A stretch of 64,000 bases of DNA from Guillardia theta CCMP2712 (GCF_000315625.1 NW_005434546.1:103981-167980); one strand, 5' to 3'; numbered from the stretch's first letter, positions 1 through 20,700 are shown. The notes: generated from the letters alone by a model not told the origin. Program-made: numbers and translations.

Positions 1-189
1 AGGAGAGGGAGGAGGGGGGATGGGGAGGGGAAGAGAGGGAGGAGGATGGGGATCAAGTGGAGGAGGAGGAGGGAGAAGGGGGGGGGGGGAAGAGGGAGGA
101 GGAGGGGAACAAGTGGTGGAGAAGGAAGGGTAACAGGAAAGGGTGCCATAGAGGGAGGAGGAAGAGGAGGAGGAGTGGATGGAGGTAGT

Positions 190-294
190 GACTGCAGAGC
201 TTTTAGCGATATCTTGAGGTGGGCGGAAGAACTGGATAAGGAGGAGACTGTCCCTCCCCCAACAGCCAGGATGGAAGGTGAGCATGTGAAGTGG

Positions 295-327
<33 letters not shown>

Positions 328-1866
328 AAGGAAACTCTTACTTGTTATGCAGGGATTTTGGATGAATTTGTCGAGGATCTCAAAGCAAGATGGAAGGTAA
401 CAGGAGTGTAGGATGAAGACGAGGAGGGAGGAGAGGAAGAGGAAGGAGTACTAAAGAAGAGGAAGGAGAGGAAGAGGAGGAAGGAAGGAGATCTGCTTGT
501 CTGACTTTCGAGCTCGCAGGACCCTGAGTATGAGAAGAGAATGCAAGGAGAGCTGACATGAGCGTGCGAAACAAGAAAGAAGAGACGGGAGGCAGCGAAC
601 GAGCAAACGAGCGACGACGACGATGACGACGATGATGACGAGGAGGGGGAGGAGGAGGAGGAGGAGGAGAAACGGGAGGCAAGGAAACAAGAGCTCCAAT
701 AAAATACACGAGGAGACGAGCAGGATAAGTCAGCACTCCTGGCGGGCACATCCTGTGTAACGAAGCTCGGAGGCGGGGACCTGCTATGAGTGAGAGAGCA
801 GGAGAGGAAGAGATGAGAGGGAGGGGAGGGAGGGGAGGACGATGGAGAAGTGAAAAAGAGGCAAAGGAGGTGGAGGTAGATAGAGAGGAGGAGAGAGGAA
901 CATGGAGTAATTGGACAGGACCAGCAGGACAAGCATGTGGAGCAGGAGGAAGAGGAGGAGCAAGGGGAACAGGCCAAGCAGGAGGAGCAGGAGGAGCCAG
1001 ACCGTCGGGATGTTGTAGCGGGTGAAGTGCTGGGGCAGAAGGTGTTTGGTACACCTGAAGAGTGTCAGCAGATGAAGAACAGGTGAGAAAATGCGAGGAT
1101 ACGAGAAAAGAAGCAAAGGGAAGAGAGGAGAGGAAAGGAGAAGACAGGGAGGAGAGGAGAGGAGAGGAGAGGAGGACAAAGAGGAATGGAAGAGGAGGAG
1201 GAGGGAAGGGAGGGCAGGGAGAGGAAGGGAGTTCACCAGGGGCAGAGAAACTGTCCAGTCTCAGGAGCGAAGGTTGAGGGATAACCGAGGGTCGGAGCCT
1301 CCACGTTCTTGTGCCGTACGATGTCTCGTTCGCGCTCTTTCTTCAGCAGCTCCAGCTCGTCCTGCTGGAGGTTGAGAGAACATGCAGGAGAGAGGGGGGA
1401 AAGGGCGGAGCGAGGAGCGAGGTAGAAGGAGGGAGAAGGGAGGTGGGAGGAGGGGAAGGGAAAAGAAGAGGGAGAAAGAGAGTAGGAACAGGGGGAGCAG
1501 AAGGAGGGAGGAGGGAGGTGGGAGGATGGAGGTGGGAGGAGGGGAAGGGAAAGGGAGAGGGAGAAAGAGAGTAGGAACAGGGAAGAGCGTAGAAGGGGGA
1601 GGGAGGAGAGGGATGAGCGTAAGTGGGAAGGGAGGTGAAAGAGGGAGAGAGCCGAGCGCAGGAGACGAGACATTGTAGAAACGAGGAGAGGAGGAAGGTG
1701 CGGCAGGAAGAGGAGGAGAGGAGTCTCTGAGGACACAAAGAAGCAGAGGTGTAAATTCGAGTGCTGATAGAGGAGGAGTAGATTCATAGGATAATGGATG
1801 CCGAAGGAGTCGAGGGGCAGACAAGAACGAATAAATCACGAACAGAAGGGAAACGATGAGGAGTTT

Positions 1867-1901
<35 letters not shown>

Positions 1902-1902
1902 A

Positions 1903-1973
<71 letters not shown>

Positions 1974-4957
1974 AAGCAGGTCACCTTGTATCTCTGCCAT
2001 TTCTGTGCTCTTGCCTCATAGTACTGGTGGATGGCACTGCCTGTTCCCAACCATCAGGTGAAACTCAAGGACCCTCAGAGATCATGACTTCTCATCTGAT
2101 CGTCGGAGTTCGCCTCCTCCGCCCTCCTCTGTTTCTGTTGGGTATTACCATCATTACCTCCTCCTCCTCCTCTTCATCATCCTTTTCTTCTTCTTCTGCT
2201 TCTCTCTCCTCCTCCTGATCCTCCACCACCACTACCATCCTCCTTTCCTCCTCCTCCTCCTCCTCGCTTACTCGATATGTCTCTATCACGTCCGTCTTGA
2301 CCTCGTCGAAGTTTCGGAGTTCGCGCTCCAGCTTGAGGTTCGTGGAGTTGAACTTGGTCCCTGCTCCCCTGCTCCCCGTCACCTCCGCTCCCTCCTCCTC
2401 CTCCTCGTCACTCACTGAACTCCCCTCGCTGCTGCATCTCGCTGCTCCTCCTGCTCTCGGCAAGTTTTCAGAGTTGGAAGCAGAAAGATCCAATGAGAGT
2501 GGAAGCAGAGCTGAGCTGAGCAGGAAGAGGAGGAGGAAGAGGAGATATTGGTGGCAGCGGTGGTTGTAAGGAAGGAGAAGGAGGAGCAAGGGGAAGCGAG
2601 AGGAAGGAAGGACGGCGGAAGGAGTGAGAGGCGGAAGGAAAGGGATCGAAGTAGAGCGAGGGGGAGACAGAGGGTTTGCCTTCAGCTCGTCAAGCTTTCG
2701 AGAAAGACAGAAGGAGCAATCTTCTTCTACAAGAGGATGAAACCTTCGAGGAGGAATCAAACTTCACAACTTGACGAAACCTATCATAGTCTTTTCTTCC
2801 TCATCATCCTTCTCCTCCTCCTCCTCCTCCTCCACCTCCTCCTCCTCCTCCGTTTCTCGTGATGACGATCAACATCATCATCATCATCATCATCTTGTTG
2901 GAGATGATGATCCTACTGATCACAGGGGGGGGGGTGGTGGTTGTTGTCCTCCTCCTCCTCCTCCTCCTCCTCCTCCTCCTCCTCCTCCTCCTCCTCCTCC
3001 TCCTCCTCCTCCTCCGTGTCCTTGTCTTCCTCCTCCTTGTCCTCCCTCATCATCCTACTTATTCACAAGCAACTTGATTTTTCTTCTCCTCCTCCCTGCC
3101 TCTCCTCCACCTCTCAATCTCCTTGCCTTTCCCTCCCCTCCCCAAGGGGTTCTTGATCTGATCTCCCTCCTCTCTCCCTCTCCTCTCTCTCCCTCCTCTC
3201 TCTCTCCTCCCTCTCCGCTCGTCACCTATGGTTGCTCTTTGTCTGAGTGAGTCGGGACAAGTTGTCCTGGTCTACTGTGATCTTGGGCGCGTGAACCTCG
3301 TTGGAGTGCTCGATGCTCATGAAAGGAATGCTGACGAGGAGACATATCAAACGAGAGGTGTCGATGAGAGCAGAGAAGAAGAGAAGAGAAAAAAGGTAGG
3401 AGAGCAACTGAAGGACAGAGGAAGGGAGGAGGGCGGGAGAACGAGGGGAGGAGCAGGTCGTACGAGCAGTCCCAGCAGTAGACGCGCGAGGTTGCATGAG
3501 TGACTGCGCACTTGACGCGCGGCTGACATGACAAGCTGAGATAGTGGAGCATGACAAGGAGGGTCACCTGGTCTGCAAACAAGATCTGAATGTGAAAGTC
3601 GTCGCCCAGTTGCTTGCTGTCAAACTTTTAACGCGCTGCAAATCTGCTGGGGAAGCTGGCAGACCGGAGGTTCTTGGGGATGCGGTCAAAGCAGGACTTG
3701 TCAAATACCATCGGAGTGTGATCTATGAAACCTACGAGCACATCACATTACCATCATCATCATGATCATCACCAACAACAACAACACCTTCTACATCAAC
3801 AAGCACATTATCACCGAACTCAACTTTGAACGCATCATGAACAAACATATCATAATATGACAACACCACCATCACCATCGAAATCATCACCATCACCATC
3901 GAAATCGACATAATGTCGAGCACTTCATACGTCCCTCCTCCTCCTCTACCAGTGTTGAACCAGAGCTGGCAGACCAGGACGAAGGGAGAGGAATGATACT
4001 TCCTGCCATACACCCGCACGCAGACATCTCCCGCCACCCTGACGTCGCACCTCAGGAGGGGACGAGACCAAGTCCCACCAGAGCTCCTCACCTCAACCGT
4101 TTGTCAAAATGAAAGATGACGTATTTTGACGTGTCGTTGATTGGCATTCCTGAGGGCCGGGTGAGAGGAGGAGCTGAGCGTTGGATAGTGACCTTCGTTC
4201 TTTCCCTTTGAGTTGTAGACGATCTGCTCAGAAGACGCGTTTCCCTGCGAGGGAGGATGACGTCCTGCTGACATCTCCTCCTCCTCCTTCTCCTCCTTCC
4301 CCTCCTCCAACCTTGTCCGACCCTGTGATGTTCATCGAGATGACCAGCCGCAGCTTCCCCATGCTCAGCTCGGAGTTGGAGATAACGATCCGACTGATCT
4401 CAGCTGGGCCTGTGCTGGGCGTCAACCTCCCGATGCTCTTCCATCTTGACTCACCGGGTTTGGCAGCAAATCGCTGGGAGAAGTAACCGACGTAACTGCA
4501 GAAGCGTCGGAGAGGTGGGAGAGGAGGAGGGGTAGGCACTTACCGGATCTGGGAGGGGATAGACACTCCTCCCTCCCCGTTCCTCATCCTCCTCCACGAG
4601 TAGAACTTGATGGCCTAGTAGCCCTTGGGGTCAAGAGGGGAGAGGAGGGAGGAGGGAGGAAAGGGGCAAGGGGGACTAGGGGGCAAGGGCGACCTCTGTA
4701 GCAGACGGGAACAACTGTCTGTAGGCGTACAGCTGGAAGTAGTGAGGCTACGGCAGAAGGCAGTGGGCAAGGGGCATACAAGGTAGCAGCAGATCATAAG
4801 CCCCGTCCGTCCCTTGCCAGCCTGTGAGGATGGGACAGAGGTTCAGCAATCTGACTAGCGGGGGAACTTCATGGTGTAAAGACCTTGCAATGAGCGAAGA
4901 CAACATTCCCTGAAAGATCCTCTCAGCAAACAAGCAAAGGTACGGTATGAGGAAAGA

Positions 4958-7005: not shown

Positions 7006-10000
7006 ATGTCAGACGACAAACTTTCCTTTGTGAGGAAAGAGCTTGGAGATCAAATGGAGGGCATCAAGAAAGAATGGGAGAATGCAGGTACTGAAAGGCC
7101 TGGAACATGATGAATCCCTGTGACCCAAGGTATGCAGTTAGCAAACAGCACGACGCGCCGCCAGGATTGTCATCGTCCGAGTACCAGAAGTATATCACCT
7201 TCATGGGCCCTTGCTCCCTTGACCTCTTTGAATGCCAGATGGAAATTCAATCAGTCGGAGAAGGCAAAGAAACGACTGTCGGACCTTGAGGTAGCCTGAC
7301 AGCAGTCTTTACATGATTGATTTGACCATGTTGCAGGAGAAGCTCAAACGACTACAACTGTTGGAACAGAAGCTAAGGCGCTTGAAGAACGTGGGAGAAG
7401 ATGTTCAAGAGAATGTGCGACACACTCCTGCATCCTTGAGGGAAGTCACATCTCCCCAGATACCTCTGGACATACAACTACCTAACGCAGCCACTGCTGC
7501 TGCTTCCCCCACGGCGCTGCCCGCTCCTGTCCAAGAGCCTCTGTATGTGTGCGATGGGGCGGATGAAAGTGATTGACTTACCTACAAGGCTGGACAATGG
7601 TTTTGAGAATGCTAATCCGCTAAATAAGGTTCAAACCTACGATAAACCTCAGTAATGCGCATCCCAACCTTGATGCTTGACCCTGTGCTAATTGGGCGAC
7701 TGCGCAGTGAAATGCCGCAATATATCCGGCCGCTATCTCCAAGCACACTCCGAAACATCATTCGAGAGGAGATGAGCTACAAACAAGGTGATGATGTTGC
7801 GCACTGCATCATGAACTCTTTAGTTGATGTGATGACAGAGAAAGGAGAGAGATCGCAAAGACAGGATGCAACCTTGGATAATGTCCCCAATCTTATCGCG
7901 AGCTACAAGACGCTGACAAACTAGTCTCTTTGCAGGGCCATGAAGATAAAGACAAGAAATTGAATCATTGGGACACGTTTGATGGGGGTGACGACGACAA
8001 AAATCCGGAACACATGCATGTGGAGATATCAGACCCCAAGAAACCGGTCACCTTGTTTGCTGTTTGCATGCGACATTTGACAACATATACAGAAAAAGCT
8101 CCTAACATTGGAAGATTTCGTTCCTGTCAGCTGTCCGTACTTCTTCGGAGGATTCAACAGGAGAAGTCTGATCCGACAGCAATGCTTCGAGATCTATAAG
8201 AGTGTAAAGTGGTCCACATTCTTCTTGATGGTAATATGTCGCTCTGTCTCTAGATGGTCTCAAACCCTTCCAGGTTGTTTTGTCAAACAGCATCTACATC
8301 GCCCTCTATCCAGCCTACATCGACTTTCGAAATGGATCTACCTTTGCAAGATCATTTCAAATATTTGATGGGCTGTGTTTTGCAGTCATGCTCTTCGAAG
8401 CTCTTTGCGGCATCATTGCATGTGGGCTGTACTCTGCGGAGTCCACATGGTTGCGGTCGACGGACATGCACAAGATTGAGCTCTTCATCATCACAGTCAC
8501 TGGCGTAGAGTACCTGGGGAAACTTTTGGCTTATCCCTTCCTCAACCTCAGGGCTTTTCGTCTGCTGCGAATTTTTCGCATTCTCACGAAAATCAGAGCG
8601 CTTGCAGGGGTGAAGGCGATCATCCTCACCCTCAAGCAGGTGTGTAATGATGTACTGTCAGCCGCTTGTAGCTCCTCATGCTCTTGTTTCCCAGGGTCTC
8701 CAGCAGCTTGCCACCATATTCGCCATGTTGACCTTCCTGATGGCTGCGTTTGCCATCTTCGGGAACTCGATCTACGCGAGGTCATACAGGAGGAGATGTG
8801 TCACGCTGTCGCGTCAAATCCCAGCATGCGCCTCTGACTCCTCCACCGGGTGGGCTAACACCTGTGACCTGCACAACCTGAGTGCTACCAAGACTCAGGC
8901 CCCCGGTCAGGTTGCCATAGCCGGCGGTTATCCGTTCGAGACCTGGTGCAAAATATACGCGATAGCCATTCCTGCTGGGCAGCCCGTGCCGGAGAATTTG
9001 ACGTACCCTGTGATCCAAGACGCCAAGAGCATCGCGTCCTACAACAAGAAGTACCCGCGCGACCCCTACGGGCGATACCACAGCTGTCAGATGAGCGAGT
9101 TTGATGCGGGGAAACCTGTCACTGAAATGTGCGACGACCTGGGAAGAGAAGGCAACCCCAACAATGGCTTCGCAAACTTTGACAACATCGGAGATGGGAT
9201 GCTTGTCATCAGCCAACTGGTAGCGCCTGACAGCTCGTACGACTTCCTGTTGCGATCGATTGAGAGTGAGCCCGAGGCGATGATTGGCACCTACTTCTTG
9301 TGGGCCATGATCACCATCTTGTGTACGTTCTTGATGGTCGGAATCTTCGTGGCTGTGGTGACTGGGACGTTCAAGAAAGTGAGAGAAGCGAGTCAGACAG
9401 GCAAGAGTGGCTTCCTTGAATCTGAAGAAGATGCTGAGTTAGAAGACCATACCCGCACTTCAGCCTTCTCTGATATCATGGATGACAACACAGATGGAGA
9501 GGCCGTTGTTCAGAAAGCATCTGCTCGCCTGCTAAAGAACAAGTACTTCAGGCATTTCACCAACCTAGTGATGATGGTTCATGGCGTGGCGATGGCTGGA
9601 AACCAGTACGATGCTCCGGTGCAGTGGCAGCAGAATGCTTACTGGAGTTTCTTGTTCTGTAATCTTTACTTCATGTCTGAATCCTTGCTGAGACTGATAG
9701 AAAGCGGCGGCGTGGTGAAGTTTTGGAAGGATAATTTCAACAAATTCGAATTCGTTTTGGTTCTAGTTGGAATGATTGGGGTAATCACATATGATCCCAT
9801 CTTGTTGCTGCTTCCCGCGTTGAGATTTTATCGGCTCATGAGTTATTTTCCTACTCTGGAATCGCTTCTATTCTCAGCTGTTTCAAGTGTGCAAGCGATT
9901 GCAAATGTCTTCATTTTCATTGTCATGGTTGGCATTTGTTTTGTCATAGCTGGAAGGTATATCTTGAACTGTGACATTTCTGTCTCAGAGAATTGCATGA

Positions 10001-13000
10001 GAGACTTGACACGATCTAACTTTAGCTCCTTCATTCTGGCCAGCTTGACCATGTTTCAGCTTCTCATCGGAGATTCATGGTCAGGAGTTCTTTATAGTTC
10101 CTTGTATGCAAAAGACTCTACATCAATGCAGATATTTGTCTGCCTTTTCATAATGTCTTGGTTTGTTTTTGCGAGCTTGATCTTGAATAATCTCTTCGTT
10201 GCGGTGATCATCGAAAACTTCGAGATATCGGTAACAATCGAGAACATAGGAAAACCAGGAAACGCAGCAAAAGTCCGTGAGTTGTTCAAGAAGGCATATG
10301 AGGGATTCTACAAAGCAAACTCTCGCATCATCGGAAGGAACCTGGAGTCTCGAGGACAATCGGTTCCTTCACTCTTACCGGCAAGGTCCAGACTGAAACT
10401 TCAGAAGCTCCAGGAGGAGGCCATGCACGAGGCCCTGCCTTCAGCCAAGGCGGACGACCTGATACCCAACTACCATCAAGGAGGAGCCGATGAGTCGCAC
10501 ATCTCCAAGATCTTGAAGGAAGTCACAAACCTCACTGTGGTCAAGACTGTGGTGGATGAGATCCTAGAGGAGCGCGTCCTATTCTTCTTTTATCCGTACA
10601 GCCCGATCCGCAGGTTTTTCGTCTGGTTGGGCAAGCAATACATCTTCGACCTGTTTGTGTACTCCGCCATCCTCGGAAGCTGCTTCTTCCTCATCATCAC
10701 TCCGCCATACGAGGACATGGGCTATGACCCAATCGTGAGTTACACTGCGATGGCGTACTGGAACCGTGTGTTTGTTTTTGTCTTCACAGTTGAGTTCGGC
10801 TGCAAGATCATGGCGAATGGTCTCTACTTCACGCAGACTGCCTACCTCAAGAGCGGGTGGAACAAGATGGATACTCTGGTTCTCATGTTCGCATGGATTG
10901 AGGAGTCGGGGGTCTTGACGCAAGGGAAACTAGCCAAGGTCGTCAGGATGTCACGAGCTCTGCGGCCTCTGCGACTGATGAAGAGGAACGAAGGGATGCG
11001 AGTGGTGATTGATGCTCTCATCAGCACGCTCTTGCCTGTCTGGTATGTCATCATCTTCGCCGTCTTCACGTTCATCGTCGGCGCACTCATGGCTGTTGGG
11101 CTGTTTGGAGGGAAGCTGAAATATTGCAATACCCCGGTAGCAGACTTCCCGCTGGGAAAGAAGGAATGTATGGGCTACTATGTGAATGACGCGGGATATA
11201 TGATCCCTTCGGCGTGGAACAACCCGGACTTCAACTTTGACTCTTTTTACTCGGCGATGATCAGCCTGTTCAGAGTCACGACATTCAAGTACGTCAGTAT
11301 CATCTTTGCTTGCATGGACATCACAAACATCGATCAGAGCCCTTCGACCAACTACAGCCCCATCAACTCACTCTTCTTCGTTGTCTACTTGATCATAGGA
11401 GGACTCTTTGTGATGAACTTGTTCGTCGGCTTCATCATTGATGGGTTCAACGCAAACAAAGGATCCTCCCCTCAAGAAGTTCTCTTTCATCGCTTCACGC
11501 GTCAGGTCAACTCTCACCGACCATACTACGAGTACTTCAAGAGGCCCAAGAATATTGTTAGTACATTGTTCCAGAGAGTTGCTGAAAGTAGAACGTTCCA
11601 GACATGGTCGACTACCTGTGTTTGTATCAACGTCATATTCATGTTGATGGAGAACACAGATTCAGGAAAAACCTTGAAGACTATCTTGACGTTGCAGAAC
11701 GACGTCTTCTTCGGTCTACTCGTCTTTGAAGTGTGTATCTTCCTCATTGCTTACGGGCCAGGAGGCTTCTACAACGATCCTTGGAAGGGGTTTGACCTGT
11801 TTGTAGCCCTTGGAACCGGCTCGGGCTACATCGCCAACAATCCAAAAATCAGCGCAGGGGCGAGGGTGTTTCGACTGATGAGGGTGATAAGGCTCATGAA
11901 AGCTTTCAAGCCCATCAGGATCATCATGGAGACCTTCCTGCAGAGCATCAAGCAGCTTCTCAACATCGTCGTCCTTCTATTCCTCGTCTACTCCATGTTT
12001 GCCGTGGTGTTCGTCCAAGTCTTCGGGGTAGTCAAGTACGGAAGCAGGATCGGGCCGACTGCTAACTTCGAGACTTTTCCGGTGGCGCTGCAGACGATCT
12101 TCCAGCTGGTGACGGGAGACGAGTGGCAGTCGATGATGGTGGACTGCCAGGTCTCACCTCCAGCATGCACGCTCCAGTTCGAAGGGAAGTCGTTCGGCGA
12201 CTGCGGCAGCTCTCTCTCGTTCCCTTGGTTCGTCTTCTTCAAGCTGGTCTGCGAGAGCGTCATGCTCAACCTCTTCATCGGTATGATCTTAGACAACTTC
12301 AGCTACATCACCGACGACGTCGCTCAGGTCGAGGACAGCAGCTGGACTCACGGTGCCTCGGGCGATCAGATCGCAGTCATGAGCGAAGTGTTCCAGCGGT
12401 ACGACGGCATGACTGGCAGGATGCCTCTGGTCAGCCTGCACTCGCTCTTGCTCGATCTGCCTGCTCCCCTGGGGTTCCTGCAGCCGGACGAGAGCGTGCA
12501 GTACGGCCCCTACGAGAAGGCGTGCGAGGTGCTGGTGCGAGCGGAGCTGAACTTGGCGGTGAGGCACGAGAACAACGAGATCAGCAAGCGGCATGGATTC
12601 TTGCAGAGGTTCCTGAGGCTCGGGGGCCCTAAGAAGCCCAAGTTCTCTTCCTCGGTGTACTTCGAAGACCTGATGCTCGTCCTCCTCTACTGGAGGGTTC
12701 CGCGCATGGTCCCCGAGGCGGTGAAGGAAGCGAGGATGGACCGGGTGGAGGAGGTGGCTCTGATGGCCTACGCCCTCATCATCCACGATTTCTTCAGGCT
12801 CCTCGTCGCTCGGCGCAAGAAGGCGGAGATACGCGACAAGATCGCGGACCGTTTCGAGTTCAGGAACTGGAGCAAGAAGGACTTGCACTACTCGCGTCGT
12901 CTCAAGTACCTGAATGACGTCAGGGAGGTCGGCAAGACGCAGGCGCAGGCTGTGAAGCTCAGCCTCTACGACTTGCTCGTCCACCCTCAAGAAACGGTCG

Positions 13001-13746
13001 TTGCCGAGCTCAGGTCCATCGACATGATCCCAGAAGACATGGTCGACCACGCGAGCGCGATCCGTCAGCTCCACCTCAAGGCCGCAAAGCCGATTAACGG
13101 CATCGAAGTCTTCAGGAACCGGCTGGTCAACAGCTCGGTCGTGCTCAAGGCCCTCGACCCCGGGCACAAGCAGATGGGCTACATGGTCGCTGACTTCACC
13201 CGGCTGTCATGGAACGGCTGGTGCATCGTCAACCTGGAGCAGGAGACATTCTTCCAGCCGTCGAGCATGTTGGGACATGGCACCCAGCCCAAACACGGGC
13301 AGGGACATGCGTGGACGCGAGTCGACCTGTACCTCAAGTCATCCAACAAGAAGTTCACGCGGAGAAAGCTGGGAAGTATCCTTGACATCCAGTCGTTTGT
13401 CATCGCGGATCGAGACGTGCAACAAGCTCTGCGGTCGAGCGAGAAGAGCAGGAGCTTCGTCCGTCTCAACACAGGCAGCCACCTCTACCAATCTCAAAAG
13501 CTGCAGGCCCAGCAAGCCAAGAGGTCCAAGAAGAAGAAACAATCGCGGGTAGAGCCTGAGACAGGTGTCGCTCTAGATACAGCTTGCGTGCTTGAGGTGA
13601 TAGGATACATCAGCCACCATCTCTCACAGAAAGAGCTCGACGATGATGGGGAGGAAGAGACGACGATCCGAGAGGAGGAGACGACTGAAGGGGTGGCGCA
13701 GTCAGAGGAAGGAGCAGTGGAGGGAGAGGAGATGGAAGACGAGTGA
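7006..13746 (+). CDS. Four-domain voltage-gated-type cation channel alpha subunit (NALCN/Cch1/Cav/Nav superfamily)
   Basis: The 1699-aa ORF 8647-13746 plus upstream exons encode four 6-TM repeats. S4 segments: AFRLLRIFRILTKIR, LPALRFYRLMSY, KVVRMSRALRPLRLMKR, ARVFRLMRVIRLMK. Four pore loops are present, with S6 motifs such as LNNLFVAVIIENF and MLNLFIGMILDNF. The C-terminus is EF-hand/IQ-like. The start codon is tentative. Confidence 0.95.
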
Positions 13747-13799
13747 GAGGTACAGGTGCATCATATGTGTGATAGCATTTACACTTTGTTACAATACAA

Positions 13800-16700
13800 T
13801 CTCCCTCCCGTCTCGCATGCTCGAAGTCTGAGGGCTACTGGTCATGTACAAAGGTGTCATGTGAGCGATCAACTACCTTGCCGGCTTCTCCTTGGAAGAC
13901 AGAAATCTTGATGTTCTACCAGCACTTTTAGAAACACTGCCACATAGGGGCAGAGGAGCTGATGGTGAGGAGGAGAGTGGAGATCAGGTGGAATGGTAGC
14001 AAGGGAACGGGGAAGGAGTGAAAAGGTATCAGGGAGTGGGACGGGACGTACATGTCCTCTGCGGTTGACAGTCAGGTCAAGCTCTTGCTCCCCGACGCCC
14101 TCCCTCAGCATGGGCCCGCATCTAGAGCAACATGTCAGGCCCAGCTCTCTTCCAGCATATCAAGTCACGTGGAGCTGTTGGTGAGAGCGCCGTTGATGAC
14201 TTTGATCTCATCGCCTTCCTGCCCTTGACGTCATTCATGCCCAGCAGAGCAGCTGAGAAACCGTCAGGCCTGCACGAGCTGCGATGGAGCCTGGAAGGAT
14301 CCTGATGATCCTCTGCTCGAAGAATTCAGACGGGGGGAGGGGGAAGGAAGGGAGGAAAGCGACAGGGAGGGAGAGAGAGGAGAGAGGGGGAGGGAGGGAG
14401 GGAGACGAGGGAGATGAGGGGAGGAAGGGAGGGAGGCAATAGGGGAGGGACGGGGGGCGGAGGAATGACAAGACTTGGAGGGCAACAAAGAGAGGAGTGC
14501 GTGACCGTGCTGTCCAGGTAGAGCCCCAGGCTTGCGCTGCTGGACTTGCTGGATGTTCTATCTGCTGTAGACGACTTTGGGTTCCAAAAGGTGCGAGTCA
14601 TCAAAGGGCAGGACCAACTCGCATCCTACCTCGTCTTGTCGTCCTCCTCCTCCCCTCTCCTCCTCCCCTGACATCTCAAGTGACCATCACCTATCGATGT
14701 CAGGCAGCTACCTTGATAGCTGGGATGAGAGCTCGAGAACTTGCTCGTGATGTCGTCGGCATCAAAGCCTGACACCATCATGCCTTACAGGCACCCCCAG
14801 CAACAAACTCCTCGTTTTCCTCCCCCCCCCATTCCCCTTTTCCAACCCGCCCCAACTGCTCATTTTCCTCCCCCTCTCTTCCTCCTCCTCCCCCCTCCCC
14901 CTTACCAGCTTTCTCTAGATCAAGGGATTGGACGGAGTCGCTATCCTTGCTTTCTTGCGATGCGAAGCTCAACCTGCAAATATTTCTCAACCATCATCCA
15001 GCATCTCAGTATCTTCAATCTCCTTCTCTACTCCGGCTCATTCCCCTCTCTTTCTTTCACTCGTCTTCCTCCCCTTTCTCCTCCTCCTCCTCCCGACCTG
15101 TCAGGTGTCCGTCTCTTGCTCTCCAGCTCGATCGCCCTCTCAAATGCTGACTCAATCTCTTGCACTTTCTGCGCATCAGTGAGCCTCCTCCTCCTCCTCC
15201 TCCTCCTCCTCCTCCTCCTCCTCCTCCTCCTCCTCCTCCTCCTCTCACCGCTTCCAGCTTCTCCCGCTGCAACAAGAAATGCCGAAAGATGTTTCGCTGC
15301 CATGGTAACGGTCAGACTTGACACGAGAGACTTGCGGGAGACTTTCTCTTCCTCGAAGCTTCTCAGCAAAGCGCTCTTCTCCTCCTGCCGGTTCAGGGTG
15401 ATCGGTTACACGATGGTTACAAATCTGCGAAAGGAGACTGACATCCCAGGAAGACTTGGAGGGCCCGCGGTTGTCTTGCTGAGACTGAAAAGATAATGAG
15501 AGAGGAAGGAGGAGGAAGAGGAGGTAGTGGTGGTGGAGAAGGTGGTGGAGGAGGAGCTCATAGAGTAGGAGGATGAGCAGGGGCAGGAGCAGGATTGTGT
15601 TGGTGGGTGGTGGACGGGGAGGGGGGGGGGGGGGGCGGAGGAGGCGCATAAGGAGCAGGAGGAGCGATGAGAACGTACCTGGCTGCCTCCAGCAGTCATC
15701 TGCAAACTTCAAAGTCAGTAATGGGGCGCAAGGGGAAGCGGTGAAATACTCGAGCGATCTGATCGTTCAGCCTCTTGACTTCTCCCTGCAGAACTTGTTC
15801 GCTCGACGACCTGCAACGTGAGTAAGGAAGAGGAAGAGAAAGAGAAGACATATTGGAGAAGTGCACGCATGACATAAGGACAAGCAGGCGATCAGGAGAG
15901 GAGAAGCAGAAGAAGATGACGAGTCATGAAACTGGAAGAAGAAGAGGAAGGCTGGAGTGGAGGTAGAGGAGAAGAGGAGGAGAGTGGGGAGGAAGAGGTA
16001 GAGGAGAAGAGGAGGAGGGTGGGGAGGAAGAGAGCTGTGGTAAATTTGATTTCACCTTTCCTTTAGCACAATGTCCATCTCCTCCAGATTGACTTCCACT
16101 GAGCCTAGTGGTCAGAAAGGGAAAGAACAGGGAGACAGAGGAGGGGAGCAGAGAGGGGAGGAGAGGAGAGGAGAGGAGAGGAGAGGGAGGAGAGGAGGAG
16201 GAGAGAGAGGAGGAGGAGAGGAGGAGGAGAGAGAGAGGAGAGGAGAGAGAGAGAGAGGAGAAGGAGGAGGAGGAGGAGGANNNNNNNNNNNNNNNNNNNN
16301 NNNNNNNNNNNNNNNNNNNNNNNNNNNNNNNNNNNNNNNNNNNNNNNNNNNNNNNNNNNNNNNNNNNNNNNNNNNNNNNNGAGAGGAGAGCAGAGGAGAG
16401 CAGAGCAGAGCAGAGCAGAGCAGAGCAGAGGAGGAGAGGGAAGGGAAGGGGAGGAGAGGGGAGGAGAGGAGAGGAGAGGGGCGGGGAGGGGAGAAGGGAA
16501 GAGGGGAGAGGAGGGAAGAGCAGAGGAGTGCAGGAGAGCTCGAACATGATAGTCTCTCCTTCTTTTCTTGAATCAATTCCGACTGTAATTTCTTTGCGGA
16601 AGTGTCAAACTTTGACACATAGTTTGACATTCGACTGAGCAGACCTGAACCGTATCTTCGAGCTCTTGTAGCCTTCCATAAGAAGTTCCCTTGATAATTG

Positions 16701-17731
16701 TCAGGAGCTTGCAAGGTGAGGAGAGGAAAAGGAAGAAAGTCGAGCAGCACAGAAGAGGAGAGAAGAGGCCAGGACAACAAGACTGAAGCAAGGAGGCGAG
16801 CGCGAAAGAATAGACAAGAAAAGATCACAATACACAAGGAAGCGATGATAGTTTCACAGCCGGAATCAAACACTGGTTATTGCTGCCAGGGAGATCAACA
16901 AGAATGAGAAGAGAGGGAAAGAGATCCATCAACAGGAGAGCATGACAGGAGTTGCACCTGAAAGTCCCTGAAGTTGTCGAACACCTCCGACGATCTGTTC
17001 ATCAGCACACGTCAAATCAGGTCGACGGCGCCGCATGTCTCGCACTCACTCTGAATCAACTCGATTGAGGTGTGTCTGCTTTGTGTACGTTACAACTATA
17101 CATTCAACTGGCACAAGGGAGGCCAAGAGGAGGGAGGGGAGGGAGAGAACGAGGAGGAGAGGTAGGAGGAGAGGGGAGGAGGCAGACGAAGGAGATAGAG
17201 GAGCGATTTGAGGCATACAGGAGCGATTTGAGGAGGAGGCGGTAGATGAGGGAGGGAGGGAGGGGGGAAGGAGGGAGGGAGGGAGGGAGGGAGGAGCACA
17301 AGGATGTACCTGTCTCAAGTATTCCTCCTCCAACTCCTTCTGTAGTTTGCGATTTTCTGCCTGAAATCGATGGGAAGCAAAACAGCCGAGTCAATGCCTC
17401 TCAACATCTCTCTGCCACCTCCTCTGACTTTTCTCTTTCCCCTTCCTCGCTTTCTCTTCCTTCCTGATTCCCTCGCATGTCACACTCTTGTGTTCACCTC
17501 CACTACCTCCTTTTTCTCCTCCTCCTCCTCCTGCTCTCTTGACATCAATCCATGTCTGGTTCTCCTTTCCCAATCATAGAGGATTCCATTTTTCTCTCAC
17601 CTGCAAGACTGAAAGCGCGTCCTTTGCCTCCTGGTACTTGTTCGCCTGACCGTCAAATGTAAGATAAATGGGTGCCGAAATCACCATCACCATCACCATC
17701 ACCACCATCACCACCACTACCATCATCATCA

Positions 17732-17766
<35 letters not shown>

Positions 17767-20700
17767 ATCATCATCATCTCCTAATCCCAATCTTCATCGT
17801 ATTAACAACTTGATCATTCTCACAAGTTCAAGAACGCTGTCGAATTCCATTCTAGCCTGCTATCATGTTCAAATATTTGCACCGAGCAAAAACTTGTTGA
17901 GACCTCTAAAAGTTTGCAGAGATCATGTCAGCAACTCGTGAGATTAAGAGAAAAATGAGGAAAGGAAGAAAGAGGAAAAAAGAAAGGGAAAAGGAAAAAC
18001 GATCAGGAGTACAGAAGCGAAGAGCGGCAAGAGGAGAAAGCGTCAATGAGCAAAGAGGAGAAACAACAGAGAAGAGAGAGTTCGGCGTTCACCAGGAGAA
18101 TACTTGAGGACAAGTTCCATCTGCATCGAGGGTTTGATTGCTGCAAAGGCGGCAAAGTTTGAGATCCAACAGGAGAGAAGAGAGAGGAGGTAGAGGAGTG
18201 GACGGAAATTTTGACAAGAAGTAATTGAAAGAGAAAGGATAAGGAGATTTTGAAAACGAGAGATTGAATGGGGGAGGCTGTGAGCGATTCCAGGAGTAGG
18301 AGAGGAGGAGGAGGCTGGTTGTTCCCTGGTGCGGTAAGGGGACAGAAAGCAGGGGCAAGGGAAAGAGAGACAGAGAGGGAAGGGCATGCTCCGAACAGGA
18401 CGAGCAGATTGTGAGAGAAGACGCTGGAGGGTTGAGGAGAGGACCTGGGCTGCTGACGGGCTTTATAGAAGTTAGAAGAAACGAATCTGTGAGATTCAAT
18501 TCACCTTAGGCTCCCAAGAGCATTTGAAGACATGAAACATTTGATGGAATGTGGGCCTGCTGTTGGGGTTGAAATTCAAACAGCCCTGGAGGAGGAGGAG
18601 GAGGAGGTGGTGGTGGTGGTGGTGGTGGTGGAGGAGGAGGAGGAGGAGGAGGAGGAGGAGGAGGAGGAGGAGGAGGAGGAGGACGAGGAGGAGGAGGAGG
18701 AGGAGGAGGAGAGGAGGAGGAGGAGGAGGAGGAGGAGAGGAGGAGAGTGGAGAGAGAGAGAGNNNNNNNNNNNNNNNNNNNNNNNNNNNNNNNNNNNNNN
18801 NNNNNNNNNNNNNNNNNNNNNNNNNNNNNNNNNNNNNNNNNNNNNNNNNNNNNNNNNNNNNNAAAGAGCAGAAAGAAGAGAGGAGAAGAGAAGAGAGAAA
18901 GACGCAGGAAAAAGTGTCACCGACAAGAACAAGAGAATTGAACTCCTGAAGAGATGTTTGATTGCAAAGCTAGCACGATCACATCATACACTCGCACGGC
19001 ATCAACCCTTCCCAGACATGGAATCCGAGTATACTGAAAACGCTCTTGATAATTCACATCAATAGAACACGAGCAATCACAGAATTTCGTTTAAAAAAAC
19101 CGCAATCATCCGTCTTACTCGAATCAAATTCTCAAGAGGCGATGGAAGTCCAGGAGGGATTTGAGGTATTTCTTTGTTGAGAACCTGGTGGAAACATTGA
19201 TATGGGGAAACAAGAAGGGAGAGGTCCTGTAACCAGCCTGCCCCCACTCTTTCTCCTCCTCCTCCTCTTCCCCCTGCTCCTCCTGCTCCTCCTCTCCCCC
19301 TTGCTCCCCCCCTCCGTCTCCTCCATCTCCTCCATGCAGCCTCCTCCTCTCGTCTCTGACCTTCCTCACAATAGGCGCCATCTTGATCCCGTCCCAAGGC
19401 TTCACTCCCTGTAACACCCTCAGCCCAACCAGAGGACAAGGGAGAACAAGAGAGGAGGAGACAGGAGGAACAGAAGAACGGATGAAGTAGGAGGATAGAG
19501 GAAGCAGAGAGTCAGAGAGGATGATAAAGGAACGAAAAGGGAGCGTGGGGAGGAAGATGTTTGGGGGATGTTACCGAGAGCATCTCGATCAAGCTGCATG
19601 CGAAGCTCCACGAGTCCGCCTTGAAGGTGACACCTTGCGAGAGGAGTGATCAGATGAGCGGAGAGAGAGCGAGAAGGAGGGAGAAGGTTGAGGAGCAAGA
19701 AGGAGAGGGAGAGGAGGGAGGAAGAGGGAAGGTGTGAAAAATGGAGAGGGAAGGAGAGGGGGAAGGGGGGAGGGAGAGGGAGAGGCAGCGGGAGAGGCAG
19801 AGGGAGAGGCAGCGGGAGAGGCAGAGGGAGGGAGTGGGTAAATTGTTCAAGATGCAAAGAATGGGTACCAGTCAACAGTACGATATAAGACAGCGGGGGG
19901 CATAACGAGGATGAGAGGGAGGAACAGTGAGGAAGAAGGGGGGAGCAGGGTTCAGGGAGCAGGATACCGCCAAAGAGTTCTGGGTCGAAGGATTCGGGTG
20001 ACATGTAGTTGAAAGTGCCTTGGACGTTGGATGGCATGTGAACTCCAATAGTCTCTGAAGAGATAGCAGGAGGACAAACGAGCACAGAAGAAGGGGAAAG
20101 GGAACATGATGTGGAAGGGGAAAAACAGGAAGCAGGAAAGAGGCGGGAGGGCAAGGAGGAAAATCCACAAGGAGGGAGTAGGGAAGTGGAGAAGGAACAG
20201 GAGGAGGACAGTTAGGAGATATCATATGAGCAAATCATGAACAACTCTCTATCACTCTCGATATCCCAAAGTCCGCCACGACACAGTGATCAAGATCGTC
20301 TGAAGGTGCTGGTTCAGGGGAAGACAAGGTCAATTCTGCAAGCTTTCCTATCAAGAAGTTGGGAGGCTTCAGGTCCTGCGATCGCCCATGTCATGTCAGA
20401 CGTGTGCACACAACATGGGAAGTACCTGTGAGATGATATTTTGGTCGTGGAGTTCGGCTACTGCCTTGCAGATCTCCAGCCCATATCGCTGAACTTCCGC
20501 GAGGGGGAGCTTTCCACCAGGATATCTGGAAGCAGCCTTGAGCTGAGGTGGAACAACATGCGTCTGCTCTTTCAGCATCACCTTCGCATTCTTGACAACA
20601 TGCTCTCTCTATACAGCTTCATCACGATGCACATCTTGCCCTGACAGCACGTCATGCTCAACACCAGATGAAAGTCACTTTGACATCTTTGTTCGTCGTC

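What the first reader, a model, noticed from the sequence alone, without database searches (positions are those of the whole stretch)
9205..12200. Four-domain channel with an unusual D-D-K-D selectivity filter and NALCN-like features
Seen: the pore loops read SQLVAP-D-SS (Asp 9229), FQLLIG-D-SW (Asp 10072), FRVTTF-K-YV (Lys 11287) and FQLVTG-D-EW (Asp 12118). Known: Cav channels have EEEE or EEDD, Nav has DEKA, NALCN has EEKE, and a domain III Lys confers Na+ preference. The domain IV extracellular segment DCQVSPPACT...DCG resembles NALCN/Cch1, and domain II S4 keeps only about two Arg. The conserved post-filter Trp is lost in domain I (to Ser) and in domain III (GW replaced by Y, a one-residue deletion). 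Inference: this is a Na+-permeable or leak-type channel in a non-opisthokont alga, possibly an independent origin of the domain III lysine.
Basis: partly seen in the sequence, partly recalled or inferred. Interest (0 to 1): 0.78.

Follow-up and report, generated by a model that had tools for sequence, protein, structure and literature searches.

The report
Cryptophyte four-domain channel with D/D/K/D pore
This is an expressed gene of the alga Guillardia theta for a four-domain voltage-gated cation channel whose pore filter really reads Asp/Asp/Lys/Asp, but this filter type was already published for Guillardia in 2018, and no current recording from such a channel turned up in the paper searches run here.

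Summary
**Observation: confirmed.** Each aligns with the selectivity-filter residue of Cav, Nav and NALCN. In an AlphaFold model each lies in the loop between pore helices P1 and P2.

**The gene.** It is Guillardia theta GUITHDRAFT_166006 (XP_005822331.1). Spliced transcript contigs from three studies show that it is expressed.

**The family.**
- D/D/K/D is conserved across a family with at least six further loci in this genome.
- Every named member is a cryptophyte; many more are unnamed metagenome proteins.
- The whole family shares a two-arginine domain II S4 and lacks the post-filter Trp in domains I and III.

**Not new in kind.**
- Pozdnyakov et al. 2018 reported D/D/K/D(G) for a Guillardia clade and for oomycetes, and compared it to NALCN.
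- Senatore et al. 2025 have this very gene in their tree.
- This paralogue was absent from the 2018 set. Its RefSeq model wrongly splices out most of domain II, including the filter Asp.

**Interpretation: partly supported.**
- The Lys is independent of the NALCN and Nav lysines.
- The family lies on the NALCN/Cch1 side of the deepest supported split, but it is not a NALCN/Cch1 orthologue.
- Three charge-rich S4 segments argue for voltage gating, not leak.
- Na+ permeability remains a prediction.

The parts
7936..8046 (+). 5' coding exon for the cytoplasmic N-terminus. Transcripts join it upstream to an exon ending at 7882.
   Evidence: Spliced contigs of three studies. Mapping of P0001 and P0003.
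8047..8092 (+). Intron, 46 nt, GT..AG.
   Evidence: A joint skipping 46 nt in X1, X4 and X6. Sequence read.
8093..8230 (+). Exon: pre-S1 region and start of domain I S1.
8231..8273 (+). Intron, 43 nt, GT..AG.
   Evidence: A joint skipping 43 nt in three runs.
8274..8639 (+). Exon: domain I S1-S4. The S4 stretch counted (RAFRLLRIFRILTKIRALAGVKA) has 7 Arg/Lys, four of them Arg at every third position.
   Evidence: Pfam Ion_trans hit on this ORF, E 1.5e-7. S4 counts.
8640..8694 (+). Intron, 55 nt, GT..AG. The RefSeq model uses a different 3' site, at 8661/8662.
   Evidence: A joint skipping 55 nt in three runs. P0003 mapping.
8695..13746 (+). Single 5,052-nt exon: domain I pore, domains II-IV, a roughly 480-aa C-terminal region and the stop codon.
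   Evidence: ORF. Four Ion_trans stretches, E 4.5e-121. Contig X1 runs unbroken over 8692-13800 with 0 differences.
9229..9231 (+). Domain I filter Asp (D358), in ...APDSSYD.... Position +2 is Ser, not Trp.
   Evidence: Lies in the P1-P2 loop of the model.
9541..10227 (+). Domain II (about aa 462-690). Its S4 keeps only R556 and R559.
   Evidence: Helices of the AF2 model. S4 table. R556 and R559 are invariant.
9619..10131 (+). Stretch that RefSeq model XP_005822331.1 removes as an 'intron' (aa 488-658: most of domain II, including its filter Asp). It is coding.
   Evidence: P0003 mapping. Transcript contigs are continuous here. P0001 contains it.
10072..10074 (+). Domain II filter Asp (D639), in GDSW. 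Invariant in 15 family members.
10639..11457 (+). Domain III (about aa 828-1100). Its S4 has 8 Arg/Lys.
11287..11289 (+). Domain III filter Lys (K1044, AAG), in TTFKYV. Invariant in 15 family members. Position +2 is Val, not Trp.
   Evidence: Loop T1042-Y1045 in the model, pLDDT about 90. No transcript differences.
11590..12312 (+). Domain IV (about aa 1145-1385). Its S4 has 7 Arg/Lys.
12118..12120 (+). Domain IV filter Asp (D1321), in GDEW. Invariant in the family, with an acidic residue at +1.
12142..12207 (+). Extracellular loop after the domain IV filter (DCQVSPPAC...GDCG). C1337 and C1349 are invariant in all 34 channels aligned.
   Evidence: This is the '4-0-2-2' cysteine framework described in PMC6259924.
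12313..13743 (+). C-terminal cytoplasmic region. Its first part looks, to my eye, like the EF-hand-like and IQ-like region of Cav and Nav (not tested). Family-conserved motifs continue further out, and no Pfam domain matches.
   Evidence: Consensus of A1. The Pfam scan finds only Ion_trans.

Best explanation
The region is the main exon of Guillardia theta gene GUITHDRAFT_166006. It encodes an expressed pseudo-tetrameric four-domain cation channel.

The gene belongs to a multigene family in which every named member is a cryptophyte. The family's pore filter is Asp/Asp/Lys/Asp. Domains II and IV keep the canonical G-D-x-W turn. Domains I and III, which face each other across the pore, have lost the Trp at filter+2.

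Three of the four voltage sensors (domains I, III, IV) keep full sets of S4 charges; domain II keeps two. The most likely mode of action is therefore a depolarisation-activated channel.

By analogy with DEKA in Nav, EEKE in NALCN and Glu-to-Lys mutants of Cav, the single domain III lysine among three carboxylates should abolish high-affinity Ca2+ selectivity. The pore should then carry Na+ and other monovalent cations.

Shown: identity, expression, gene structure, filter residues and their conservation, S4 charge pattern, phylogenetic position. Inferred: voltage gating, ion preference, and any cellular role such as amplifying receptor potentials or driving escape and flagellar responses.
For: - Identity: 100% match to MMETSP transcript protein P0001 and to GUITHDRAFT_166006.
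- Fold: four Ion_trans repeats. The AF2 model has pTM 0.76 and matches Cav, Nav and NALCN structures at TM about 0.7.
- Filter columns. K1044, D639 and D1321 are invariant in 15 members that are 35-49% identical to P0001.
- Filter residues lie in the P1-P2 loops of the model.
- S4 Arg/Lys counts are 7 / 2 / 8 / 7 for domains I-IV.
- Expression and splicing: spliced contigs from three studies, continuous across domain II, no sequence differences.
- Family: 100* clade. At least six further loci in the genome.
- The same clade appears in the published tree with Geminigera, Baffinella and Cryptomonas members.
- Published precedent that lysine-bearing filters go with Na+ permeability, with D/D/K/D in Guillardia named as a candidate.
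Against: - The paper searches run here found no recording from any D/D/K/D channel.
- Asp instead of Glu, and loss of two of the four Trp residues that brace the filter, could change the geometry enough that the DEKA/EEKE analogy fails.
- Domain II S4 is charge-poor, as in the weakly voltage-dependent NALCN and Cch1.
- Relatives nested inside the family have replaced the Lys by Glu, Pro or Gln, so the Lys is not indispensable to all members.
- The N-terminus of the protein is unresolved.
Confidence: 0.6

Rival explanations
1. It is the cryptophyte counterpart of NALCN/Cch1: a weakly voltage-dependent 'leak' or stress-activated channel that works with an extracellular Mid1/FAM155-like subunit.
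For: - Domain III Lys plus an acidic residue at domain IV +1, as in NALCN.
- Domain II S4 has lost its two outer charges in the same register as NALCN and Cch1.
- The family sits with NALCN/Cch1 on one side of a 96-97* split from Cav and Nav, and inside the part of the 2025 tree that I take to be its 'clade A' (the label itself is not in the text I read).
- The G. theta genome has Mid1-domain loci, and cryptophyte Mid1 homologues are published.
Against: - NALCN+Cch1 form their own 97-98* clade that excludes this family.
- The 2025 tree puts a different cryptophyte clade (with GUITHDRAFT_164211, 148910 and 101752) nearer to NALCN/Cch1, and its authors chose that clade as the Mid1 partner.
- S4 of domains I, III and IV are fully charged, unlike NALCN and Cch1.
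- PDB sequences score Cav 368 bits, Nav 289, NALCN 217.
- No UNC79 or UNC80 hit, though that search had no positive control.
Confidence: 0.12
2. It is a voltage-gated channel that still conducts Ca2+ or is broadly non-selective. On this view the Lys tunes conductance or block without making the pore prefer Na+.
For: - Three acidic filter residues remain, plus conserved outer acidic residues (D362 and E1322 are invariant).
- Family members with E, Q or P at the Lys position keep every other signature, which suggests the pore tolerates change there.
- By sequence, Cav channels are the closest solved relatives.
Against: - The Lys is invariant in 15 diverse members and present in all 19 family rows of the first tree, which implies strong selection on it.
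- In every characterised four-domain channel cited in PMC5824947 and PMC6259924, a filter Lys goes with Na+ permeability.
- The 'calcium beacon' Asp at domain II +1 is absent: the turn reads GDSW.
Confidence: 0.25
3. The D/D/K/D reading is an alignment artefact, and another residue occupies the domain III filter position.
For: Domain III lacks the G-W that normally anchors the alignment, and one residue is missing somewhere after the Lys.
Against: - The offset from the conserved P1 Phe is identical to Cav, Nav and NALCN (F+6), with no indel before the Lys.
- The AF2 model puts K1044 third in a four-residue P1-P2 loop, the same position as in domains I and IV.
- Pozdnyakov et al. reached the same reading independently for the paralogues.
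Confidence: 0.03

Closest known systems
Guillardia D/D/K/D(G) clade 'WSC VIII' of Pozdnyakov et al. 2018 (PMC5824947). By their S4 strings its members appear to be Guillt6 = XP_005824876 / GUITHDRAFT_115870 and Guillt7 = XP_005840919 / GUITHDRAFT_132377. In the tree file of Senatore et al. 2025 (PMC12412391) the same genes sit in a 100/100/1 clade holding only cryptophyte sequences.
   Same: - Same organism and the same filter.
- Same two-Arg domain II S4: ours reads LRFYRLM, Guillt6 IRIYRIMR, Guillt7 LRMYRLMI.
- It clusters with GUITHDRAFT_132377 (P0094) in my tree, and with both paralogues in the published tree, which contains this very gene.
   Different: - This paralogue is not among Guillt1-10: none of their S4 strings matches ours.
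- Its RefSeq model lacks the domain II pore loop, so its full filter could not have been read from the database entry.
Oomycete D/D/K/D(G) clade 'WSC VI' (Phytophthora, Saprolegnia), Pozdnyakov et al. 2018.
   Same: - Same published filter motif.
- In the 2025 tree an oomycete pair, Plasmopara XP_024576343 and Saprolegnia XP_008603782 (= Saprod4), groups with Palpitomonas. That group is next to the Goniomonas plus cryptophyte clade holding this gene (support 80/76/0.98).
   Different: - I could not fetch the oomycete sequences, so neither their filter nor a shared origin of the Lys was tested here.
- The domain II S4 of Saprod4 keeps more charges (LRTLRIIGRLMWR).
NALCN (animals, filter EEKE or EKEE) and Cch1 (fungi).
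   Same: - Lys in domain III (NALCN).
- Acidic residue at domain IV +1.
- Domain II S4 lacks the outer two charges.
- The domain IV loop xDCxVxPPxC...DCG.
- Same side of the deep split from Cav and Nav.
   Different: - Not in the NALCN+Cch1 clade.
- Asp, not Glu, in the filter.
- S4 of domains I, III and IV are charge-rich.
- Trp is lost in domains I and III.
- The III-IV linker is shorter and lacks the LLTxxQ motif.
- No UNC79 or UNC80 found.
Animal Nav1 (DEKA).
   Same: Four-domain architecture. Lys at the domain III filter position. Charge-rich S4 in most domains.
   Different: - A separate clade, so the Lys is an independent gain.
- No match to the Nav-specific Pfam family that Nav1.4 carries (PF06512), and the III-IV linker does not align with the Nav inactivation-gate motif region.
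- The domain IV filter residue is Asp, not Ala.
Cav1/Cav2 (EEEE) and Cav3 (EEDD).
   Same: Highest sequence scores to solved structures: Cav2.2 368 bits, Cav1 about 365, Cav3 316. Same overall fold.
   Different: - No GPHH domain or Ca_chan_IQ Pfam domain.
- Lys replaces the domain III acid.
- No Asp at domain II +1.
- On the opposite side of the 96-97* split.

Membership tests
[quoted passage not shown] | Four tandem Ion_trans repeats in one polypeptide. | tested here: met
   One search finds 4 stretches in the long exon, plus the domain I voltage sensor in the upstream exon. The AF2 helices agree.
[quoted passage not shown] | Fold of solved Cav, Nav and NALCN alpha subunits, with P1-loop-P2 pore modules. 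| tested here: met
   Foldseek E 1e-41 to 1e-36, TM about 0.7, to Cav2.1, Nav1.7, Cav1.2 and NALCN. P1/P2 helices are present in all four domains.
[quoted passage not shown] | Conserved core cysteines in the extracellular loops, including two after the domain IV filter. | tested here: met
   C1337 and C1349 are invariant in 34 diverse channels. Alignment.
Cryptophyte D/D/K/D clade (WSC VIII of Pozdnyakov 2018) | Filter Asp/Asp/Lys/Asp (or Gly in domain IV). | tested here: met
Cryptophyte D/D/K/D clade (WSC VIII of Pozdnyakov 2018) | Forms one clade with GUITHDRAFT_132377 and GUITHDRAFT_115870. | tested here: met
   100* clade including P0094 (= GUITHDRAFT_132377). The published tree file holds this gene with both paralogues at 100/100/1.
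NALCN/Cch1 | Placement inside the NALCN+Cch1 (+apusomonad/CRuMs) clade. | tested here: not met
   NALCN+Cch1 are 98* and 97* clades that exclude the family. In the published tree another cryptophyte clade is nearer. The family does share the larger side of the split.
NALCN/Cch1 | Charge-poor S4 in several domains (weak or absent voltage sensing). | tested here: not met
   Only domain II is poor (2 charges). Domains I, III and IV have 7, 8 and 7. NALCN has 3 in each of domains II and III and 4-6 in domain IV; Cch1 has 2-6 per domain.
NALCN/Cch1 | Filter with a Lys in domain II or III among Glu residues (NALCN); Glu in domains II-IV with Asn or Thr in domain I (Cch1). | tested here: inconclusive
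   The Lys is in domain III as in NALCN, but all three acids are Asp. By parsimony the Lys is an independent gain.
NALCN/Cch1 | Works with FAM155/Mid1, UNC79 and UNC80. | tested here: inconclusive
   Mid1-domain loci are present in the genome (36.3 and 28.6 bits). UNC79 and UNC80 were not found, but the control genomes were silent too. Physical association cannot be tested with these tools.
Nav1 (DEKA sodium channels) | DEKA filter and a hydrophobic inactivation motif in the III-IV linker; placement in the Nav clade. | tested here: not met
   The filter is D/D/K/D. The linker is shorter and does not align with the Nav motif region. Nav is a separate 99-100* clade.
Cav1/Cav2 (HVA calcium channels) | EEEE filter, GPHH and IQ domains in the C-terminus. 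| tested here: not met
   Pfam finds only Ion_trans. Animal Cav hits carry PF16905 and PF08763, and no family member does.

The most novel reading that the evidence does not exclude
The D/D/K/D family may be an independently evolved, truly voltage-gated Na+ channel lineage. Its pore is two-fold pseudo-symmetric: canonical G-D-x-W turns in domains II and IV, Trp-less turns in domains I and III. On this reading it gives cryptophytes Na+-based action potentials, and possibly oomycetes too if their D/D/K/D channels share the origin. That would be an origin of four-domain Na+ channels outside animals, separate from the Nav and NALCN lysines.
Probability: 0.3. Interest if true: 0.75.

Novelty: new member of a known kind. 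Interest (0 to 1): 0.35.

Why it matters
Four-domain channels with a filter lysine outside animals are the obvious candidates for an independent origin of Na+-based excitability. The paper searches run here found none that has been recorded from.

What this report adds for an experimenter:
- A corrected, transcript-supported coding sequence. The database model lacks most of domain II.
- Evidence that the Lys is under strong conservation in a large family, common in metagenome assemblies, whose named members are all cryptophytes.
- Natural E, Q, P and N variants at the Lys position, which can serve as comparison constructs.

It does not change the published picture of what kind of channel this is.

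Tried and rejected
- **AU test.** I tried to test whether the family plus NALCN plus Cch1 can be one clade. It did not finish on 49 rows x 1190 columns and I dropped it. With three blocks meeting near the midpoint the question reduces to where the root lies, and these data cannot place the root.
- **Oomycete, Goniomonas and Palpitomonas relatives.** All three word searches returned none by name. The 2025 paper's sequence file is cut before those taxa. Whether the cryptophyte and oomycete lysines share an origin therefore rests only on the published tree and text.
- **Fold search.** It cannot tell Cav, Nav and NALCN apart as the closest fold: all score TM about 0.7.
- **Raw RNA reads.** Run X21 covers almost only the 3' end of the stretch. 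Splice evidence comes from assembled contigs of X1, X4 and X6. These are RNA-derived, because they lack three GT..AG introns.
- **UNC79 and UNC80 searches.** They were silent in G. theta and in all control genomes, so absence is not shown.
- **Cluster look-up.** It gave no taxon names beyond Guillardia, Hanusia and Hemiselmis.
- **Big representative-protein search.** Not used, because the protein was not left open by the other searches.
- **Exon joining.** Full-length analyses used P0001, the database protein returned by the search, or the long exon by reference.
- **Rejected reading.** The domain IV loop as a NALCN/Cch1 marker, because it is shared with Nav and many protist channels.

Full report
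**What is there**

Window 7936-13746 (+) holds a gene with three confirmed short GT..AG introns: 8047-8092, 8231-8273 and 8640-8694. A 5,052-nt terminal exon follows at 8695-13746.

Pfam finds four Ion_trans stretches in the long exon (E 4.5e-121). It also finds the domain I voltage sensor in the exon at 8274-8639.

The product is 100% identical to a complete MMETSP transcript protein (P0001, 1862 aa). It is also 100% identical, over the parts they share, to GUITHDRAFT_166006 of Guillardia theta CCMP2712 (P0003). A Hanusia phi orthologue is 85% identical.

Full-length work used P0001 as returned by the search, or the long exon by reference.

**Checking the observation**

- **Alignment.** I made three alignments with animal Cav1/2/3, Nav, NALCN, fungal Cch1, green-algal channels and unnamed protist channels. 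In each, the four residues fall in the filter columns. K1044 shares its column with the Cav domain III Glu, the Nav1.4 Lys and the NALCN Lys.
- **Domain I anchor.** The downstream invariant Asp anchors the alignment: APDSSYD against MEGWTD.
- **Domain III anchor.** The offset from the conserved P1 Phe is the same in all channels, with no indel before the Lys.
- **Model.** An AlphaFold2 model of residues 180-1379 was built on 34 aligned channels (pLDDT 77, pTM 0.76, about 90 in the domain III pore loop). It puts all four residues in the 3-4 residue loops between P1 and P2.
- **The missing residue.** In the model K-Y-V occupies the positions of E-G-W. The one-residue deficit that MAFFT places right after the Lys more probably lies further along P2.
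- **Domain II S4.** It has two charges (R556, R559). Domains I, III and IV have 7, 8 and 7.
- **Trp at filter+2.** It is absent in domains I and III.

All the observations hold.

**Expression and a database error**

Assembled contigs from three separate studies (X1, X4, X6) lack the three introns, so they derive from RNA. They run unbroken and without a single difference from 8692 to 13800.

The RefSeq model XP_005822331.1 removes 9619-10131 as an intron. That deletes residues 488-658, which is most of domain II including the filter Asp. It also uses a different 3' splice site at 8661/8662. Both features conflict with the transcripts.

The transcripts also join 7882 directly to 7936. RefSeq instead joins 7628 to 7936. 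The N-terminus is therefore unresolved.

**The family**

Thirty-five database proteins, 33-54% identical to this one apart from the gene itself and its Hanusia orthologue, share the same signatures:
- domain I: P-D-S-Y-Y-D
- domain II: G-D-S-W-S
- domain III: (F/I/L/V)-K-Y-(V/I)
- domain IV: G-D-E-W

In 15 diverse full-length members D639, K1044, D1321, R556 and R559 are invariant. The domain I Asp is replaced by Asn in one member and Ser in another.

Every named member is a cryptophyte (Guillardia, Hanusia, Hemiselmis). The rest are unnamed metagenome or run-assembly proteins.

The G. theta genome itself has at least six further loci with these motifs, on contigs C104, C4, C29, C38, C89 and C3.

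A focused search found relatives that keep the family's domain II S4 and the Trp-less domain III but carry another residue at the Lys position: Glu (P0128), Pro (P0129), Gln (P0135, P0139) or Asn (P0162). On a tree of domains II-IV the E, P and Q forms nest inside the Lys clade, which points to secondary replacements. The Asn form is sister to all the rest (98*).

**Relationship to known channels**

- **By sequence.** Solved Cav channels score highest (368 bits), then Nav (289), then NALCN (217). The fold search does not tell them apart.
- **My trees.** In a 49-row, 1190-column tree the family is a 100* clade on a long stem. NALCN+Cch1 are a separate 98* clade. A 97* branch unites Cav, Nav, green-algal and several protist channels, and excludes both the family and NALCN/Cch1. 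The second tree repeats that split at 96*.
- **Published tree.** The tree file of Senatore et al. 2025 contains this very gene. It sits in a 100/100/1 clade with GUITHDRAFT_132377, 115870 and 107403, plus Geminigera, Baffinella and Cryptomonas sequences. That clade is next to Goniomonas channels, and then to a Palpitomonas plus oomycete pair. All of this lies within the part of the tree that also holds NALCN/Cch1, which I take to be the authors' "clade A" (the label is not in the file). A different cryptophyte clade is closer to NALCN/Cch1, and the authors paired that clade with the cryptophyte Mid1 homologues.

The family is therefore a distant relative of NALCN/Cch1 inside one ancient assemblage. 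It is not their orthologue.

**Which "NALCN-like" features hold up**

- **Real and possibly shared.** Domain II S4 has lost its two outer charges in the same register as NALCN (LRVVRL) and Cch1 (LRFYRV), while Cav keeps LRxxRLLRxFK. The residue at domain IV +1 is acidic.
- **Not diagnostic.** The xDCxVxPPxC...DCG loop after the domain IV filter also occurs in Nav and many protist channels. Among the channels aligned, the animal Cav and green-algal sequences are the main ones that depart from it. Its two cysteines are invariant in all 34 aligned channels. They belong to the general cysteine framework described by Fux et al. 2018.
- **Against a leak channel.** Three S4 segments are charge-rich.
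- **Subunits.** Mid1-domain loci exist in the genome. UNC79 and UNC80 were not detected, but those searches had no positive control.

**Origin of the lysine**

On the first tree a domain III Lys needs three separate changes: this family, NALCN and Nav1. Cch1 and coral Nav have Glu there.

Whether the cryptophyte and oomycete D/D/K/D channels share one origin could not be tested. I could not retrieve the oomycete sequences. The published tree makes a shared origin plausible.

**What is already published**

- Pozdnyakov et al. 2018 state that a Guillardia clade (WSC VIII) and an oomycete clade (WSC VI) have D/D/K/D(G) filters resembling the EEKE filter of NALCN. They call these channels candidates for Na+ permeability, and they note the acidic domain IV +1 residue.
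- Fux et al. 2018 list DDKD among non-animal pores and attribute it to Verret et al. 2010.
- None of the ten Guillardia entries in the 2018 supplement has this gene's S4 strings. Guillt6 and Guillt7 are its paralogues.
- My literature searches found no functional study of any such channel.

**What may be new here**

These points are modest:
- the corrected gene model;
- the size of the family;
- the family-wide loss of Trp at filter+2 in the two diagonal domains. [quoted passage not shown]
- the natural non-Lys variants.

**Mechanism**

Most likely (confidence about 0.6) this is a depolarisation-activated channel whose single Lys among three Asp residues removes high-affinity Ca2+ binding and lets Na+ and other monovalent cations pass.

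- Identity, expression, filter residues, S4 pattern and phylogenetic position are shown.
- Gating and selectivity are inferred from the behaviour of DEKA, EEKE and mutant Cav filters, as summarised in the two 2018 papers.
- A role in amplifying receptor potentials or in escape and flagellar responses is speculation.

**Verdict**

The kind of channel is already in the literature, so this is a new, previously mis-modelled member of a known kind. Interest is moderate to low unless someone records from it.

Noticed in passing
window 9619-10131 and 8640-8661: RefSeq model XP_005822331.1 (GUITHDRAFT_166006) removes 513 coding bases as an intron. That loses most of domain II, including its filter Asp. 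It also uses a 3' splice site 33 nt upstream of the one seen in transcripts.
   Followed up: yes
window 7655-7935: Transcript contigs join 7882 to 7936 (a 53-nt GT..AG intron). This puts the ORF that starts at ATG 7655 in frame with the channel. RefSeq instead joins 7628 to 7936 from other upstream exons, and the MMETSP ORF starts only at 8014. The true N-terminus is unresolved.
   Followed up: partly
G000:C93:240431-242264 (L021) and G000:C5:576970-577086 (L022): Mid1/FAM155-domain (PF12929) loci in the G. theta genome. The C93 gene has several exons and an apparent signal peptide followed by a Cys-rich region. Cryptophyte Mid1 homologues were published in 2025 (GUITHDRAFT_99496).
   Followed up: partly
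proteins P0128, P0129, P0135, P0139, P0162: Metagenome relatives keep the family's domain II S4 and Trp-less domain III but have Glu, Pro, Gln or Asn at the Lys position. The E, P and Q forms nest inside the Lys clade; the Asn form is its sister.
   Followed up: yes
window 12313-13743: About 480 C-terminal residues with no Pfam match but with motifs conserved across the family, for example GIEVFR and W-x-G-W far downstream of the part that looks EF-hand-like and IQ-like. Possibly a family-specific cytoplasmic domain.
   Followed up: no
window 1-2000 and 16001-20000: Very strong strand asymmetry: GC skew 0.58 with AT skew 0.52 in the first stretch, and GC skew 0.20 to 0.37 with AT skew 0.22 to 0.34 in the second. 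Purine-rich on the + strand. Not examined.
   Followed up: no
domain I pore loops in the alignment: Ascomycete Cch1 domain I reads N-T-(Y/F)-S-D, and the D/D/K/D family reads D-S-(Y/S)-Y-D. Both lack the Trp and have an aromatic residue one position later. This could be convergence or a shared ancestral state.
   Followed up: no
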